64,000 nt of DNA, from positions 2,728,001 to 2,792,000 of the forward strand of contig OZ037772.1 in assembly GCA_964035545.1 (NCBI GenBank). Reading direction: 5' to 3'. Below are positions 108-44,381 of this stretch, one piece after another. The position numbers and the translations under genes were made by a program. The first letter of the stretch is position 1; every line of letters begins with the position of its first letter. This DNA is from Bugula neritina. Lineage: Eukaryota > Animalia > Bryozoa. The notes below the pieces were generated by a model, which did no database searches, was not told the DNA's origin, and saw only the letters and a program-made list of their open reading frames with translations.

Positions 108-405
<298 letters not shown>

Positions 406-489
406 ATATATATATATATATTTAAATATATCTTTTTGAGCTAGCAATTTGATTATAAATAGGTATACGAGAAACATTGTTATTTATTA

Positions 490-1056
490 CTTTATTAGGT
501 AAAGTAATTACACTGATATTTCGGGTACCACTGTACCCATCTTCAGAGTAGCAATGAATGAAATTCAAAAATTATTATGTTACGTTAGACGTTATGCATG
601 ACACAAAGAATAGAGAGTGGCAGTTATTGTAAATTATTGAAACTTAAGGAGATAATCTTATTTTATATATTACGCAGGTCAAAAATTATACTGATTTTTT
701 TGCATAAAAATAAATTAGAGTTGACAAAAAAAATAGATATCCAAATATAAAAACAGCAAGAATTAGTGAAACTATGTAAGAGTTGAGTAGTGTGGAGCTA
801 TCGATATAGTTTTAGTGGTATGGAGTAATTTTGTTTATTGTGTTGCGGGTTTTATTTGTTTAATGTAGAGAGCTTCGGCTACTTTTCGATGGTGGATTCC
901 TTTAAATGAATGATTTAAAACTGTTGCATTGTCTATTGATATGTTTCGATAATTAGTGGTAGAGATGTGTTCCAAAATTTATCAACACATCTCTACCACT
1001 AATCATGGAAACATATCAATAGACAATGTAACAGTTTTAAATCATTCATTTAAATA
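490..1056 (-). mobile_element. Penelope-like element 3' remnant (GIY-YIG C-terminus, pLTR with hammerhead, inverted partial copy)
   Basis: Minus-strand ~800-975 translates to ILEHISTTNYRNISIDNATVLNHSFKGIHHRKVAEALYIKQIKP..NKQNYSIPLKLY, typical of the PLE endonuclease end. 985-1054 is an inverted copy of 901-970. Confidence 0.8.
511..550 (-). ncRNA. Minimal type I hammerhead ribozyme (family B, Penelope-type)
   Basis: Minus strand reads UACU-CUGAAGA-U GGGUAC AGUG GUACCC-GAAA-UA-UC-AGUG, followed by AATAAA. Lies ~250 nt downstream of a GIY-YIG C-terminal remnant on the same strand. Confidence 0.75.
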
Positions 1057-3450: not shown

Positions 3451-5659
3451 AGAAAACTAATACATTTGTTAGTCTAAATAACAAAAGAGGTTAAGAATAT
3501 CCTTAACATAAAATTGTAACATTACTTACTGCAGCCAGTCTATATTATCGATATTTGTATCAATTAGTCAGTTTTCTAGACGTCCCCCCCTAATATAATT
3601 ATTACTGCTGCTATATCTTCTATGCTCCAATCGTCTTTAGCTGCTTTTATCTTCTTGTATATCTATCTTCATTCGTCATTTATCATTCATCCTTTTTCTA
3701 TTTTCAGAAATTCAGCTCCTTTTGTACCAAATCTTTTTGGCAATGGTTCAGATTTTAAGGATACCGACAATAACTGGCCAATGAAAACCAGCGGCAGACT
3801 GACGTAGAACTCGGTTAGGTATGTTGGCAGCTTTACAGCCAAGATAGGGATTGACGTAAGAAGGATCTGTTGTTATTGGCTCATCTTTGTATATTGTGGG
3901 CTATATAATCAATAATTGTACAGCAATCCTTAATCTAAAAAATAACTTTAAAACTATAATATGATAAAATGTATCAGTCGATGCTCACGTGTTGACCTTT
4001 GTAACAGGCTGATCAATGTCAAAAAATTTATTAGGCGTTTGAAACAATATATCATCTACATGTTGGTGTAAACAAATATTTACACATATGTGTATCTCTA
4101 TTTATGAACAGCATCTGCTATATGTTTCAGCTTTTTTATTCATTCCCATTTGTTCATCAATTAGTGTTTTATTTCAAAAGTCAATATTACAAATTTCAAC
4201 ACGTGATCATGGCGTGTGGTACTATCCTAACACACAATTACTTGTCTAAAAGCCACACTACTAAAAAATACTATATATATATATGTGTATTTAATAATGC
4301 ATTAAGCAATTTCTATGCAAGACCGAAATATTTAACTTACTCAAAACTTGTACATTTGAACTTTTAACTTCACTCAATTATTGGGCCTCATGCATCATAA
4401 AACTTTTGAACGTGTTTTATATTCTTTCTTGAATGTTGTAGATAAACTGTAGTCTACATACCTTGGTGGAGCAGATATAAGAATTTATAATTGCGTCAAC
4501 CCGTTGCAGCAGCCATCTTACTGGAAATCTCAAACAAACCTCAGCATCGCCAAAGCCATATTTTAGCAAGCTGACAGAAGATCTCAGATACATAACTTGT
4601 GAAGTACAGAAGTAAGAATTAAACACAAAGGACAGTATATGTATAATCATGCCTTCCATCAAGGCTATCGCTTTTTTAAAGAATTTTCTGAGAATAATGA
4701 TACAAATATTACCACTTCAGCTTAACAACTTATGACATAACGGTTACATTGGATATCATTTTCTAGATTTCATATTTGTCTGTGTTTTAGTACTGCCAAG
4801 GATATCACTCAGCACTAAATGGACAAAATTGCTTCTTTTAATTAAGACACTATGCTGGAGAAAGGCCAATATATATGAATTGGATAAAGAAACTAGTAAA
4901 TTATTCAGTGTTATAACTTATAATTAAACTTTGAACGAGCTTTGCTCTGATTGGTTTTTTCTGACTTATCGTAATATATATCTATATTTAGCCAGGGTTT
5001 TGTGCCTACATAGTAATGTACACTTCCTATGATAAGAGTAATTGAATGCAAATATAAATGAACATAATTTTTCTGATTTTAGTCTAGTTATGTTATAAGC
5101 ATTAGATAACTTGTTTTTGAGACAGCGGGGTGAGAGCTTTGTAAAAAATTTAGCCTAATTAGAATTTCTGTAATAGATAAACGTTACTATAGCTCCTTAA
5201 CAATTCAATTAAAGTTGAATAAAAATATACATCAAATTACCAGTTCAAAGTAAAAGACTTTGAAGGCTAATAACTTACTACGAAGATTTAAACCAAATAA
5301 CAAGAGACTAAATTCAAAACCAATTTATAATTATTCTTAGCATATGACAAGTATGAATGTTACAGCTGCTCTTATACAATGTACTTGTACAGCTCTTACT
5401 CATCCTAGTATGTTTAACTGGCATAGCATCCTTGTCTTTCTAGGGACTCCGCACATCGTTGGAGTGCAGAGGTCATCTCCAACAAAAGACTTTGAATTAA
5501 AGTGGATAAATAAAAGTAAGCGCTTGTAATGTTTTTCAGCTCTAATTAAAGTTCCCAAAATGTTATTGTTGGTAAGTTTTCAGGCTCAAGAATAATCTTG
5601 TATTTTCTTATTAAAAAACAAAAAGAGAAAAAAAAGAAAATAAGGGTCCTCAGTCGCAA

Positions 5660-6275: not shown

Positions 6276-7130
6276 TGGTAGTAGAGAAACATAAAAAATA
6301 TATTTTAATTTAGGAGGAAAAACTGAGAATAAGTAACCAAAACCGAAGATGAGGTCTAGCCGTATATTAAGAAAGTTCTCACAACAAAGTAATTAGCAAA
6401 GAAGGGTCAGAGGTCAAGCATACACCAAATCTAGCAAAGTTATTATCTTCAACAGCCTCTCAATGAAACCATGCCATGCCTAGTTCACCTCATAGCAACA
6501 CACCACTGACAGGGTGGGGTGGGGGAGCATGACTAGCAGAGACTTAGCAATTATAAACTAGGTCAGGGGGCACTTTACAAAAACACAGAATCAGAAAGCA
6601 AGTCAGGAAACTGACAGTGCCTTCCTCCTATCAAAAAGGGAGACAACCAACTACTAACCAAAAAAATACTTAAACGGACACTTGATCTAAATTTTTCAAA
6701 ATAAAAAATAGTTGTTGTAAACATGGCAACTGCACAAGATGGTGCAGAGTTGTCCACCCAATGGTCCTGCTTCAAGGAAGAGTTCAACTATTCTTTAATA
6801 GCCTCAGAAAAATCTGATGAAGAGGATAAAATAAAAATGGCCATTCTAATGCAGACCATTAGACCGAGAGGTGTAGACATATTCAAAAGTTTCAAGTTTG
6901 GGAAAGGAGAATCTAAAGATGTTTACAAGGATGTTCTATATAGGAAAATTTGACAACTTTTGTAAAAAGATCTCCAACAAAATAATTAAAAGACATCAAC
7001 TGCTATCGACAAAACAGGAATGCTTATCAATAGATGAGTAGGTCACCAACTTACATAGGATCGCCAGAAAATGTGACCTTGGTGACATGTATGATGTCTA
7101 TTTTATGCAGGCCTTTTTTCTTGGCAACAA
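6276..7130 (+). mobile_element. Gypsy-type LTR retrotransposon 5' part (putative PBS plus gag), copy 2
   Basis: TGGTAGTAGAG at 6276 resembles a tRNA-iMet PBS (TGGTAGCAGAG). ORF 6723-6953 reads W..FKEEFNY.LIAS..KMAIL; in-frame stops follow. Confidence 0.7.
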
Positions 7131-8339
7131 GAAGTATAATACGTGCAAAATTTTTAAGTTGATGCAGATTAAAAGAACTTATTTATGGGTTAAATAACAA
7201 GCAATTGATTTAAGCTTTTTCAAATATAAGGTTATTTCAATGATAGTAAAATGAATTTTACGTAAAATATAATATATTGTACGAAAATAAACAAATAGCA
7301 GCTAACTGGGTAGGAAGCATTTAACTGAGATGATAACATGTTATGTTACATCACCTTATTGTGTATGATTTTAGTATTAAGAACTTTTCTTGGACCACCT
7401 ACTACCACAACCAGTTTACCAACTAGTCAAGAAGCAAATAATGGAGATAATCGAGAAGGTGCTTAATAAAAAAATTGTATATTTGGCGATAACCTCTAAA
7501 TTTGTGATAGCTGTCATTATATTATCATACTTGCAAAAACATAATATTCAATTTTATCTACAAATAATAGTACAATAAAGTATGCTGCACATATATAGTA
7601 TCATGATTATATTAGCTAAGAATGTACCTGTGGTATTGTTTAGAGTTTACAGCTTTGACATCAAAGGGGCTTTACTAATTTACATTTGTTTGATCAATGA
7701 ATCGGAGCACTTACTATCATGCAGTCCAAATTTCTGTTCTGCATGCATCTTCAAATGAGATTTAAATGTTCAATTAGAATTACTTATTTAATGTTTTGTT
7801 TATTTTTAGTTAGCAATGTTGAAAATATTGGAGAGGTATCATGCAGTTCAACAAGCCATGGAAGGTTTGTGTTGACACTTTGAAAATGTTTTATGGTTAC
7901 AATTGGCATAACATACAATTACTTTAATGTGACACGATGATTGTATTGAATTATCAGTATGACAAGACACTTTTATCTATAATATTTTTCCTGTTTTAAA
8001 GTACAAGAAATAGATGGAAATAACAGCTCCAGCGCCGGACCAGCTTATCCTATTGAAGCACTCAAGAAAGACATATAGAAGGTGCTTAGTAATGTACTAT
8101 AATCAAATTTCTGTATATATACAAGTTTTCAGCCAAGGAGTTGCAATCACATGTTCTGTAGTTTTCAGAACAAAAAGATGCTTTTGTTGAGCAGAGTCTT
8201 GAGCTTGGTGACTTGACGAAATTGCTTTGGTCTTAGATAAGTCACAAAAGCATTTATTTGTAGTTAATCTAAATACTAATATAAGACAGTTATAAACTAG
8301 ATCTTAGTTTTAGGTCATATATAGTATGAAATTTCACAG

Positions 8340-17708: not shown

Positions 17709-17884
<176 letters not shown>

Positions 17885-19287
17885 CTATACAGCTATACAG
17901 CTATAAACATGCTCGTACATAAAGAAAATAACATTCATGCAACTAGTAGTAAATACTGTTTAGTATAAGCTTCTACTAATTTTGCTATGGTATGTAGCTG
18001 CATTATAATAAATAGCGAGTGAGTATACACTACTAAATGAATTGGTGGAGATCACAAAGCACTTAATAGTCTTTATGCAGAATTTTTCTTTCAGTCTAAT
18101 ATATGAAAGTTATAAAAATTATTTTAGAGAGAACACACACTAACTGAAAGCCAATTTGTTTTCAATAAAGTATATCATAGACCTGCATACTTTGTTCAGG
18201 AAAGAAGAGAGAGCCCCAAAGGAAGAGCCACGCCTACCATGTCCAATGAAAACAGACCTGTCATACTAAGTAGCTACAGACCTGCTATACCAGATAAAAA
18301 CAAACCTGTCATATTGCACAAAACTGAACCTGCAGCACTGAGCAAAGAGCAACCAATCAAATATTCCAAGCAAAGAGGAAACGATTCAGCATTGTGGGAA
18401 AACCTCCCCAGGGGGATCAGCAAACTCCGACAGCTGGTCAAAGTTTTAGCTACAGAAAAAAAAGAGTTGCCGAGTATTGTAATTATTCAGTGAGGAAAAC
18501 CGCATGCTTACCTTGTTCTGGTAACCACTACACAACTGTGAAGAGAAAGGGCTGGAAAGCTACACAACTTTGAGAGATTTCTCATACAGACAGCTGTTCT
18601 ATAAGAAGTGTTACATAAGAGTTGTGACTATTGACTATTATAGACAGGGTTGTAAGAATGTGGACACAGTTTTAGGATTTCTTATTTTAGGAATCCAATA
18701 CTTTAGTTATGTTATGATAGCATTAACTTAGCAGAGGGTTTGGTGTAATTTGATCTAATGCTTAATTACTACTCAAAGCAGAATGGCTTAGTATTTTTTT
18801 TAAAAAGAACATAATATTATATTTATATTTTCTTAAAAATAAATGTTTATTATACATGCCGGTCATAAAAGTCAATTCATTATATGGTATACAGAATTAT
18901 ATCTGTAAATAAACATGTGCATGCTGCAGCTGAAGAATTACAAATAAAATGAGAAGGAAACAAAACGTATTCAACTGGATGGGTTATCAGATGACATTGC
19001 TGTATAAAATGACGAATCAGGAAAAAGAAAGCCTGTGGAAACAAAGCAACACTGAACTACAATGTGGCTAACAAATACCAGGTCAACAGAAATTATATCA
19101 AAACCAATAAATAAAATACCAAGAGGTGTAAAATATCAATATAAGTACACATAGAAAAAACAGGTGATATACAGAATAAAAAGTAACAGTTTAATATTGA
19201 TAAAGCTTTTCATTTTCACACAAACATAACATCTTTACAAGGCATTATTGTATATATATTGCGAAGGTGTGGGCCATGGTACTCTGT

Positions 19288-19334
19288 TCTGTGCTGATGA
19301 GGGGACAAATCCCGAAACAGCTGCTGTCCACAGA
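19288..19334 (+). ncRNA. Minimal type I hammerhead ribozyme (family A, copy 2)
   Basis: TCTGTG CTGATGA GGGGACAAATCCC GAAA CAGCTGCTG TC CACAGA. Predicted cleavage after C19328. Followed by TTGAGA and (TA)n to ~19402. Confidence 0.9.
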
Positions 19335-19336
19335 TT

Positions 19337-19406
<70 letters not shown>

Positions 19407-21824: not shown

Positions 21825-21908
<84 letters not shown>
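21824..21908. repeat. (TA)n microsatellite
   Basis: TA run. Confidence 0.95.

Positions 21909-44336: not shown

Positions 44337-44381
<45 letters not shown>

What the first reader, a model, noticed from the sequence alone, without database searches (positions are those of the whole stretch)
19257..19402. Hammerhead-ribozyme retroelement family that sits only in (TA)n microsatellites
Seen: three copies (251-405 minus, 19257-19340 plus, 17731-17754 plus) are identical where they overlap. All end at the same 3' point (..CACAGATTGAGA) and run straight into long (TA)n, and all have TA on the 5' side too. Their lengths differ (~155, ~84, 24 bp). The two longer copies hold a complete hammerhead core with a tiny stem III. 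Established: minimal type I hammerheads mark Penelope-like pLTRs and retrozymes, and such short-stem-III forms usually cleave as dimers. Inference: a fixed 3' end with variable 5' truncation fits target-primed reverse transcription into TA repeats. Zero divergence in an otherwise decayed region suggests a young, high-copy, microsatellite-targeting ribozyme element that may also seed or lengthen TA arrays.
Basis: partly seen in the sequence, partly recalled or inferred. Interest (0 to 1): 0.8.

Follow-up and report, generated by a model that had tools for sequence, protein, structure and literature searches.

The report
Hammerhead retrozyme that lands in TA repeats
The three copies are cut-down members of a young, non-coding 271-base mobile element with a self-cutting hammerhead RNA (an animal "retrozyme"); the kind is known, but its several hundred copies (at least about 230) show clearly that it is copied from RNA into (TA)n repeats, probably by a Penelope-like element living in the same repeats.

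Summary
The three window copies are identical 5'-truncated pieces (155, 84 and 24 nt) of a 271-bp non-coding unit that also occurs as tandem arrays of up to 4 units.

- **Copy number and ends.** The 3'-terminal 21-mer occurs 269 times in the 216-Mb genome: 197 run straight into TATATAT, 38 continue into the next unit, and 34 have other followers, TA-like wherever I could read them. 5' ends are scattered: 218/197/165/92/56 copies reach at least 16/21/53/155/271 nt.
- **Ribozyme.** Each unit has a full type I hammerhead (helices of 6, 4 and 4 bp), and the circular RNA is predicted to be very compact (z = -7.5).
- **Start site.** The 3' end is site-specific. Two other TA-like sites in the unit are used 0 and 1 times. 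No insert starts at the ribozyme cut site, so the template spanned that site.
- **Candidate mobiliser.** A young Penelope-like element (reverse transcriptase plus a GIY-YIG-like tail) shares the same TA arrays, including in this window.

Verdict: an animal non-LTR retrozyme inserted by target-primed reverse transcription. This is a new member of a known kind with informative insertion footprints. The scan had already reached this reading on another copy. Self-cleavage, RNA circularity and the mobilising enzyme remain inferred.

The parts
251..405 (-). 155-nt 5'-truncated retrozyme copy (unit positions 117-271)
   Evidence: 100% identical to the 271-bp unit; the 3' end is at GATTGAGA.
257..303 (-). 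Type I hammerhead of that copy; predicted cut after C263 (minus strand)
   Evidence: core CUGAUGA/GAAA/GUC, helices I/II/III of 6/4/4 bp.
109..246 (.). (TA)n target array on the 3' side of the minus-strand copy
406..421 (.). Short TA tract between the retrozyme 5' end and the tail of a Penelope-like element
421..980 (-). 5'-truncated 3' tail of Penelope-like family PLE-A, ending in the same TA array. It holds a hammerhead-like motif at 515-546 with one extra U after A9.
   Evidence: 95% identical to L034:7395-9560 (minus). Motif position.
970..1054 (+). Inverted 85-nt piece of PLE-A abutting the truncated copy, the inverted-repeat structure typical of Penelope-like insertions
   Evidence: 98.8% identical to PLE-A positions 1595-1679, on the opposite strand.
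17731..17754 (+). 24-nt retrozyme remnant (unit 248-271) that spans the ribozyme cut site
17710..17883 (.). (TA)n array that holds the 24-nt remnant
19257..19340 (+). 84-nt 5'-truncated retrozyme copy (unit 188-271)
19288..19334 (+). Complete type I hammerhead; predicted cut between C19328 and C19329
19341..19402 (.). (TA)31 at the 3' junction

Best explanation
The copies belong to a non-autonomous, non-coding retroelement of the animal non-LTR retrozyme kind. Its unit is 271 nt, carries one type I hammerhead, and is found as single units, fractions of units and tandem arrays.

Proposed mechanism:
1. The element is transcribed. Its RNA spans the ribozyme site when it is copied, so the template is either an uncleaved multimer or a self-cleaved and religated 271-nt circle.
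2. A nick in a (TA)n repeat supplies a 3'-OH that pairs with the AUAU just after ...GAUUGAGA, 12 nt past the ribozyme cut site.
3. A reverse transcriptase copies the RNA from there. It goes round or along the template 0.1 to 4 times and stops at variable points.
4. The 5' end is then joined to the TA repeat through short microhomology, most often at the same AUAUUA site, which yields whole numbers of units.

The enzyme is most likely supplied by the co-resident Penelope-like elements, which have the same TA target, the same 5' truncation and the same inverted-copy habit.

Shown here: family structure, junctions, target, truncation curve, and co-residence with PLEs. Inferred: ribozyme activity, RNA circularity, which enzyme acts, and rolling-circle copying.
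For: **Unit and arrays.** The repeat period is 271 bp and every array ends at the same point. All 30 internal junctions read the same TATTA.

**Census.** There are 269 exact 3' 21-mers: 197 followed by TATATAT, 38 by TATTACG, which is the next unit.

**Truncation curve.** 218, 197, 165, 92 and 56 TA-terminated copies reach at least 16, 21, 53, 155 and 271 nt.

**Flanks.** 3' TA is present in 41 of 44 held arrays, while 5' TA is missing in 10.

**5' junctions.** 18 of 39 have at least 2 nt of TA microhomology against 18% expected (p = 5e-5). 13 of 50 lie at the 3' junction site against 3% expected (p = 2e-9).

**Template spans the cut site.** No insert begins at the cleavage site.

**RNA.** The hammerhead core and helices are present. 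The active fold is 3.6 kcal/mol above the MFE. The circular MFE is -98.5 kcal/mol, z = -7.5, with 72% of bases paired. There is no ORF longer than 45 aa.

[quoted passage not shown] It gives at least 90 matches at 94-98% identity, 5'-truncated. Its 3' ends lie in (TA)n, in the same arrays as retrozyme copies in the window, L019, L033, L034 and L042.

**One-event inverted pair.** A head-to-head pair at C2:30138124/30138742 shares a variant seen in no other listed copy.

**RNA libraries.** One RNA contig carries the 271-nt wrap-around joint. One probable RNA run shows summed word depth of 3,000-59,000, against 6-12 in DNA runs.

**Literature.** Animal retrozymes and the primed-circle, PLE-mobilised model: PMC7229834. 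(TA)n targeting by Hydra, Neptune and Naiad PLEs: PMC8557442.
Against: - No Rfam hammerhead model reaches its threshold.
- The retrozyme shares no detectable sequence with the PLE-A or PLE-B tails, so no SINE/LINE-like tail match ties it to a partner.
- The 3' start site is not explained by microhomology or by predicted accessibility. An equally open UAAAUAU loop is never used.
- The GIY-YIG domain of PLE-A is not detected by Pfam or by a PDB sequence search. It rests on motif reading and Atlas neighbours.
- All runs laid were contigs, so RNA ends, strand and circularity are unseen, and the deep run is only a guessed RNA library.
- The held loci are a biased sample, selected for copies of at least 155 nt or with an internal junction.
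Confidence: 0.78

Rival explanations
1. The template has the same retroelement identity but a different form. It is a linear SINE-like RNA read from a TA-flanked genomic copy, so it carries a (UA)n tail. The tail pairs with the nicked (TA)n target, and the ...GATTGAGA/TA junction is inherited rather than re-made at each insertion. No circle and no rolling-circle copying are involved; multimers descend from multimeric source arrays.
For: - The 3' junction is strictly site-specific: at least 197 uses, against 0 and 1 for other TA-like sites.
- One unused site is predicted to be just as unpaired as the used one.
- Whole-unit copies flanked by TA on both sides are the commonest class, as expected for full-length copies of a linear master.
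Against: - The unit continues TATTA after GAGA, which is itself TA-like and suggests annealing at that site.
- Arrays of 2 to 4 units are common among very young copies, although this model can only shorten arrays.
- All 30 internal junctions are exact, with no extra TA.
- The published biology of the class favours circles (PMC7229834).
Confidence: 0.3
2. The copies are 5'-truncated insertions of an autonomous Penelope-like element, and the repeated piece is its pseudo-LTR.
For: - There is a hammerhead near a fixed 3' end, together with 5' truncation, a TA target and inverted pairs, all of which are PLE traits (PMC8557442).
- A 2026 preprint derives animal retrozymes from PLE pLTRs (10.64898/2026.07.22.740005).
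Against: - In all 17 loci chosen because the sequence continues past GATTGAGA, it continues only into another 271-bp unit. No ORF is attached.
- The longest stop-free run in the unit is 45 aa.
- There is no similarity to the PLE-A or PLE-B tails found here.
Confidence: 0.06
3. It is satellite or minisatellite DNA spread at the DNA level, by unequal crossing-over or by reintegration of circular DNA through recombination at TA repeats, with no RNA step.
For: - 26% of arrays have both junctions at the same point of the unit, as integration of a DNA circle would give.
- TA repeats are fragile.
Against: - Polarity is strong. The 3' end is fixed while the 5' end varies in about three quarters of arrays, with a smooth truncation curve.
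- There are more than 200 dispersed loci of near-identical sequence.
- It is present in RNA libraries.
- A co-resident retroelement leaves the same footprint.
Confidence: 0.08
4. The copies are assembly mis-joins at TA runs.
For: TA runs are hard to assemble from short reads.
Against: - The junctions are consistent at about 200 loci on contigs of up to 35 Mb.
- The element is present in contigs of runs from 10 studies.
- The wrap-around joint is seen independently in two runs.
Confidence: 0.01

Closest known systems
Animal non-LTR retrozymes (Cervera and de la Pena 2020, PMC7229834)
   Same: - Type I hammerhead in every unit.
- Tandem units within the 170-400 bp range.
- Low GC (43%).
- No LTR, PBS, PPT or ORF.
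- RNA predicted to be highly self-paired.
- Co-existence with Penelope-like elements.
- The proposed life cycle: a primed circular RNA copied into tandem cDNA.
   Different: Here the insertion footprint is explicit: a strict (TA)n target, a single cDNA start site 12 nt past the ribozyme site, a graded 5' truncation and an excess of whole units. I found no mention of a microsatellite target for retrozymes in the papers searched. Circular RNA and self-cleavage are not shown for this family.
(TA)n-targeting Penelope-like elements of the Hydra, Neptune and Naiad clades (Craig et al. 2021, PMC8557442)
   Same: Insertion into (TA)n, 5' truncation, inverted partial copies, tandem arrangement, and a hammerhead near the 3' end (Hydra and canonical PLEs).
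   Different: The 271-nt element encodes nothing and shares no sequence with the PLE tails seen here. It would be a passenger of such elements, not one of them.
Newt, Schistosoma and cave-cricket hammerhead satellites
   Same: Type I hammerheads in short tandem repeats that are transcribed.
   Different: Those form long satellite blocks and often have very short helix III forms that act as dimers. Here the arrays are short (up to 4 units in the loci I held), dispersed at more than 200 TA sites, and helix III has 4 bp.
Microsatellite-targeting non-LTR elements and their SINEs
   Same: The target is a simple repeat and the 3' junction lies in that repeat.
   Different: No tail is shared with a LINE. 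The one LINE seen beside a copy (L042) ends in (CAAGA)n, not TA.

Membership tests
Hammerhead ribozyme, type I | Conserved core C3-U4-G5-A6-N7-G8-A9, G12-A13-A14, A15.1-U16.1, and H17 at the cut site | tested here: met
   CUGAUGA ... GAAA ... GUC|C in 70 held copies. Variants fall at N7, in loops, or keep the pairs (G.U to G-C at unit position 241 in 8 copies). Some old copies carry core mutations.
Hammerhead ribozyme, type I | Three helices around the core, with helix I open and helices II and III closed by loops | tested here: met
   helices I, II and III have 6, 4 and 4 bp; the active fold is -9.3 kcal/mol for the 47-mer and 3.6 kcal/mol above the MFE in the whole unit.
Hammerhead ribozyme, type I | Match to a curated covariance model (an operational test, not a defining feature) | tested here: inconclusive
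   No Rfam hammerhead model reaches its gathering score and Hammerhead_1 is not listed even at E <= 10. The RAGATH-1-hammerhead model aligns the same core and helices at 15-26 bits, E 0.18-2.2.
Hammerhead ribozyme, type I | Self-cleavage at the predicted site | not testable with these tools
   This needs in vitro transcription or RNA end mapping. All runs laid were contigs.
Animal non-LTR retrozyme | Tandem units of about 170-400 bp, each with a type I hammerhead; no LTR, no ORF; GC below 50% | tested here: met
   period 271; GC 42.8%; no stop-free run above 45 aa.
Animal non-LTR retrozyme | Dispersed copies with hallmarks of retrotransposition | tested here: met
   more than 200 TA-flanked insertions with a fixed 3' end and graded 5' truncation.
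Animal non-LTR retrozyme | Abundant linear and circular RNA of unit length | tested here: inconclusive
   present in an oligo-dT RNA library with a 271-nt wrap-around joint, and at very high summed depth in a run that is only guessed to be RNA. Contigs cannot tell a circle from a tandem, and DNA carry-over is not excluded.
Animal non-LTR retrozyme | Co-existence with hammerhead-bearing Penelope-like elements | tested here: met
   PLE-A and PLE-B lie in the same TA arrays. PLE-B has a hammerhead at L034:7131-7181.
Penelope-like element (the 271-nt sequence as its pLTR) | Repeat joined to an RT plus GIY-YIG ORF in full-length copies | tested here: not met
   all 17 loci with read-through past the 3' point continue only into further 271-bp units.
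SINE with a LINE partner | 3' tail shared with an autonomous LINE | tested here: not met
   the only LINE seen ends in (CAAGA)n. The unit gives no BLAST match to anything but its own family.

The most novel reading that the evidence does not exclude
The several hundred young copies are a natural record of target-primed rolling-circle reverse transcription of a ribozyme-made RNA circle by a telomerase-related Penelope RT. A (TA)n 3'-OH would be aligned on one fixed template site next to the hammerhead, much as telomerase aligns a chromosome end on its template, and the same site would be used to exit and close the insertion. That would turn the hypothetical retrozyme life cycle into something testable with defined donor, primer and start site.
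Probability: 0.35. Interest if true: 0.65.

Novelty: new member of a known kind. Interest (0 to 1): 0.5.

Why it matters
How animal retrozymes move has only been proposed: a primed circular RNA, perhaps copied by a Penelope-like enzyme.

This family supplies clean insertion footprints for that proposal:
- one target, (TA)n;
- one cDNA start site, 12 nt past the ribozyme site;
- a template that always spans the ribozyme site;
- exits that favour the same site;
- an inverted pair made in one event;
- a young TA-targeting Penelope-like family in the very same repeats.

Together these give a concrete donor, start-site and partner combination for a retrotransposition assay. The family also explains part of the structure of TA microsatellites in this genome. 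It does not reveal a new kind of element.

Tried and rejected
- **Rfam.** No hammerhead family at the gathering score over the window, nor at E <= 10 on an array or on 131 nt. There were only weak local matches.
- **Unbiased sample of loci.** I replaced this with anchored pattern counts.
- **LINE beside a copy in L042 as partner.** Rejected, because its tail is (CAAGA)n.
- **Other TA-like sites of the unit as 3' junctions.** Used 0 and 1 times, so simple microhomology is rejected as the only determinant. Predicted accessibility does not explain it either.
- **Inserts starting exactly at the cleavage site.** None found, so a cleaved linear monomer is rejected as the template.
- **The idea that the element brings or lengthens TA.** The 3' and 5' tracts do not differ.
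- **Selection on the ribozyme core.** The substitution rate is 0.9% in the core against 1.75% outside, and old copies carry core mutations. No conclusion drawn.
- **GIY-YIG of PLE-A and PLE-B.** Not detected by Pfam at E <= 10 or by a PDB sequence search. One call failed on a wrong frame.
- **Naming the organism or an already published family.** A search of the supplement of PMC7229834 for this ribozyme sequence found nothing.

Full report
**1. Observation**

They are 251-405 on the minus strand (155 nt), 19257-19340 on plus (84 nt) and 17731-17754 on plus (24 nt). All are 100% identical to one reference over their length and all end ...GCTGCTGTCCACAGATTGAGA.

The two plus-strand copies are followed directly by (TA)n. 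The minus-strand copy is followed by TAAA and then (TA)n. TA also lies on the 5' side of each.

The two longer copies contain a complete hammerhead: helix I of 6 bp (UCUGUG/CACAGA), the CUGAUGA core, helix II of 4 bp (GGGG/UCCC), GAAA, and helix III of 4 bp closed by CUG. The cut site is GUC|C, between window positions 19328 and 19329, or after 263 on the minus strand. Stem III is short, but it is not the 1-bp form of Penelope minimal hammerheads.

**2. What the family is**

The window lies in a 216-Mb assembly. The 155-nt copy gives 854 candidate matches there. All 40 that were scored are 99-100% identical.

Several hits lie 271 bp apart. Reading them shows a 271-bp unit repeated head to tail in arrays of up to 4 units, each unit with one hammerhead. 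All arrays stop at the same 3' point.

I then took 17 loci chosen because the sequence continues past GATTGAGA. In every one it continues only into another 271-bp unit, and no coding region is attached. The unit has 43% GC and no stop-free run above 45 aa on either strand.

As a circle, the RNA is predicted to fold at -98.5 kcal/mol, with 72% of bases paired and z = -7.5 against dinucleotide shuffles. Enforcing the catalytic fold costs 3.6 kcal/mol.

These are the defining traits of animal non-LTR retrozymes (PMC7229834). Rfam does not call the ribozyme at its thresholds. The RAGATH-1-hammerhead model aligns the same core and helices only weakly.

**3. Insertion footprint**

*The 3' end.* The 21-mer at the 3' end occurs 269 times (reversed control 0). 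Of these, 197 are followed by TATATAT, 38 by TATTACG (the start of the next unit), and 34 by something else. In the loci I held, that last group were TA-like variants such as TAAATATA, or copies broken later.

*The 5' end.* TA-terminated copies that reach back at least 16, 21, 53, 155 and 271 nt number 218, 197, 165, 92 and 56. This is a smooth 5' truncation curve. The anchors must match exactly, so these counts are lower bounds.

*Flanks.* In 44 held arrays with the canonical 3' end, TA is present on the 3' side in 41 and absent on the 5' side in 10. The tract lengths do not differ significantly.

*5' junctions.* In 18 of 39 the junction overlaps the TA phase by at least 2 nt, against 18% expected (p = 5e-5). 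In 13 of 50 the 5' junction lies at the very site of the 3' junction, giving 1.00, 2.00 or about 4 units, against 3% expected (p = 2e-9).

The held loci were selected for copies of at least 155 nt or for an internal junction. These last proportions are therefore indicative only.

**4. What sets the 3' end**

The unit reads ...GAGA-UAUUA-CG... at the junction, so a TA primer can pair there. Microhomology alone does not explain the choice of site. Two other TA-like sites of the unit are used as 3' junctions 0 and 1 times, against at least 197.

One of those sites, UAAAUAU, is predicted to be as unpaired as the used site. Either the enzyme recognises something next to the hammerhead, or the junction is inherited on TA-tailed linear transcripts. 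I keep the second option as a rival at 0.3.

**5. Form of the template**

- No insert begins at the ribozyme cut site: 0 matches for A/T-run + CACAGATTGAGA + TA.
- Even the 24-nt window copy spans the cut site.
- All 30 internal junctions read exactly TATTA.
- Several arrays carry private variants in all of their units.

The template was therefore continuous across the ribozyme site. It was either an uncleaved multimer or a religated circle copied more than once round. These data cannot tell the two apart.

**6. The likely mobiliser**

In L034, next to a retrozyme array, lies a 2.2-kb 5'-truncated element, which I call PLE-A. Its frame reads YGMAKIHK...RPIIS...YIDD. That is a reverse transcriptase (Pfam RVT_1, E = 1.4e-10).

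The frame then continues with LVYKITC...YVGETG...R..H...E, a GIY-YIG-like C-terminus. Pfam and a PDB sequence search do not detect the nuclease part. The nearest ESM Atlas clusters are animal RT proteins, some members of which carry GIY-YIG.

PLE-A gives at least 90 matches (300 candidates) in the genome at 94-98% identity. The C-terminus is fixed and the N-terminal end varies, and some copies have open frames of up to 811 aa.

Its 3' ends lie in (TA)n at two alternative TA-rich points. Copies share TA arrays with retrozyme copies in five held places.

One of those places is this window. Positions 421-980 (minus) are a PLE-A tail ending in the TA tract that also holds the 155-nt retrozyme copy. 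An inverted 85-nt PLE-A piece lies at 970-1054. The tail holds a hammerhead-like motif (515-546) with one extra U after A9.

A second family, PLE-B (L034:6353-7215), has a GIY-YIG-like frame, a hammerhead at 7131-7181 and a TA junction.

The literature reports (TA)n targeting, hammerheads, 5' truncation and inverted partial copies for the Hydra, Neptune and Naiad clades of PLEs (PMC8557442).

The retrozyme shows the inverted-copy habit too. A head-to-head pair at C2:30138124 (minus) and C2:30138742 (plus) shares a hammerhead variant seen in no other listed copy, so the pair was made in one event.

Against a simple partner model, the unit shares no detectable sequence with either PLE tail.

**7. 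RNA evidence**

Only assembled contigs could be laid.
- An oligo-dT metatranscriptome holds the element, including a contig with the 271-nt wrap-around joint.
- A run labelled RNA-Seq, but flagged as a guess, shows 310 contigs with summed word depth of 3,000-59,000, against 6-12 in two DNA runs.

This fits the high expression reported for retrozymes. It does not prove transcription, strand or circularity.

**8. Comparison and novelty**

The kind is known, and the model of a primed circle copied into tandem cDNA by a PLE was proposed in 2020 (PMC7229834). A 2026 preprint derives animal retrozymes from PLE pLTRs (10.64898/2026.07.22.740005).

In the papers I could search, no microsatellite target or fixed cDNA start site is described for retrozymes. 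That is weak evidence of absence.

The scan itself had already noted this family in other windows. One follow-up (s1-437835) reached the same reading.

I file it as a new member of a known kind with informative footprints. Interest is 0.5.

**9. Limits**

- There are no raw reads.
- Organism names are coded.

Noticed in passing
window 421-1054: A 5'-truncated tail of a young Penelope-like family (PLE-A) with an inverted 85-nt piece at its 5' end. It ends in the same TA tract as the 155-nt retrozyme copy. It carries a hammerhead-like motif at 515-546 with an extra U after A9.
   Followed up: partly
L034:6353-7215 (+): A second Penelope-like family (PLE-B): a GIY-YIG-like frame (6424-6876), a hammerhead at 7131-7181 and a 3' junction in (TA)n, lying tail to tail with PLE-A.
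   Followed up: partly
L042:3902-3946, 5080-5124, 5581-5625; L040:7704-7756 and 7874-7927: Further hammerhead motifs of other sequence families, on both strands and close together. They may be other small Penelope-derived or fold-back elements in TA arrays.
   Followed up: no
L042:7415-9640 (-): A 5'-truncated LINE (RVT_1, E = 3.5e-31) with a (CAAGA)n tail. Its 5' end abuts a (TA)n tract, so TA arrays may also capture the 5' ends of unrelated retroelements.
   Followed up: partly
G000:C2:30138124-30138800 and G000:C3:3688123-3688770: Head-to-head inverted pairs of retrozyme copies. The two arms of the first pair share a private 1-nt deletion and a T>C change in helix II, which indicates one insertion event.
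   Followed up: partly
unit position 241 (helix II), e.g. L039:5980-6026: A subfamily of at least 8 held copies has T>C, turning the G.U pair of helix II into G-C. The pair is kept.
   Followed up: partly
runs X17 and X19: Runs labelled as two other organisms (B and C) hold the unit with 0-1 differences per contig. This could reflect very close relatives, a species complex, mislabelling or contamination.
   Followed up: no
G000:C5:14702171-14703074: Three TA-terminated copies in the same orientation, 411 and 331 bp apart. These are repeated hits on one TA array.
   Followed up: no
window 21837-21908 and 44339-44372: Two further (TA)n tracts in the window hold no recognisable element, so they are unoccupied targets.
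   Followed up: yes
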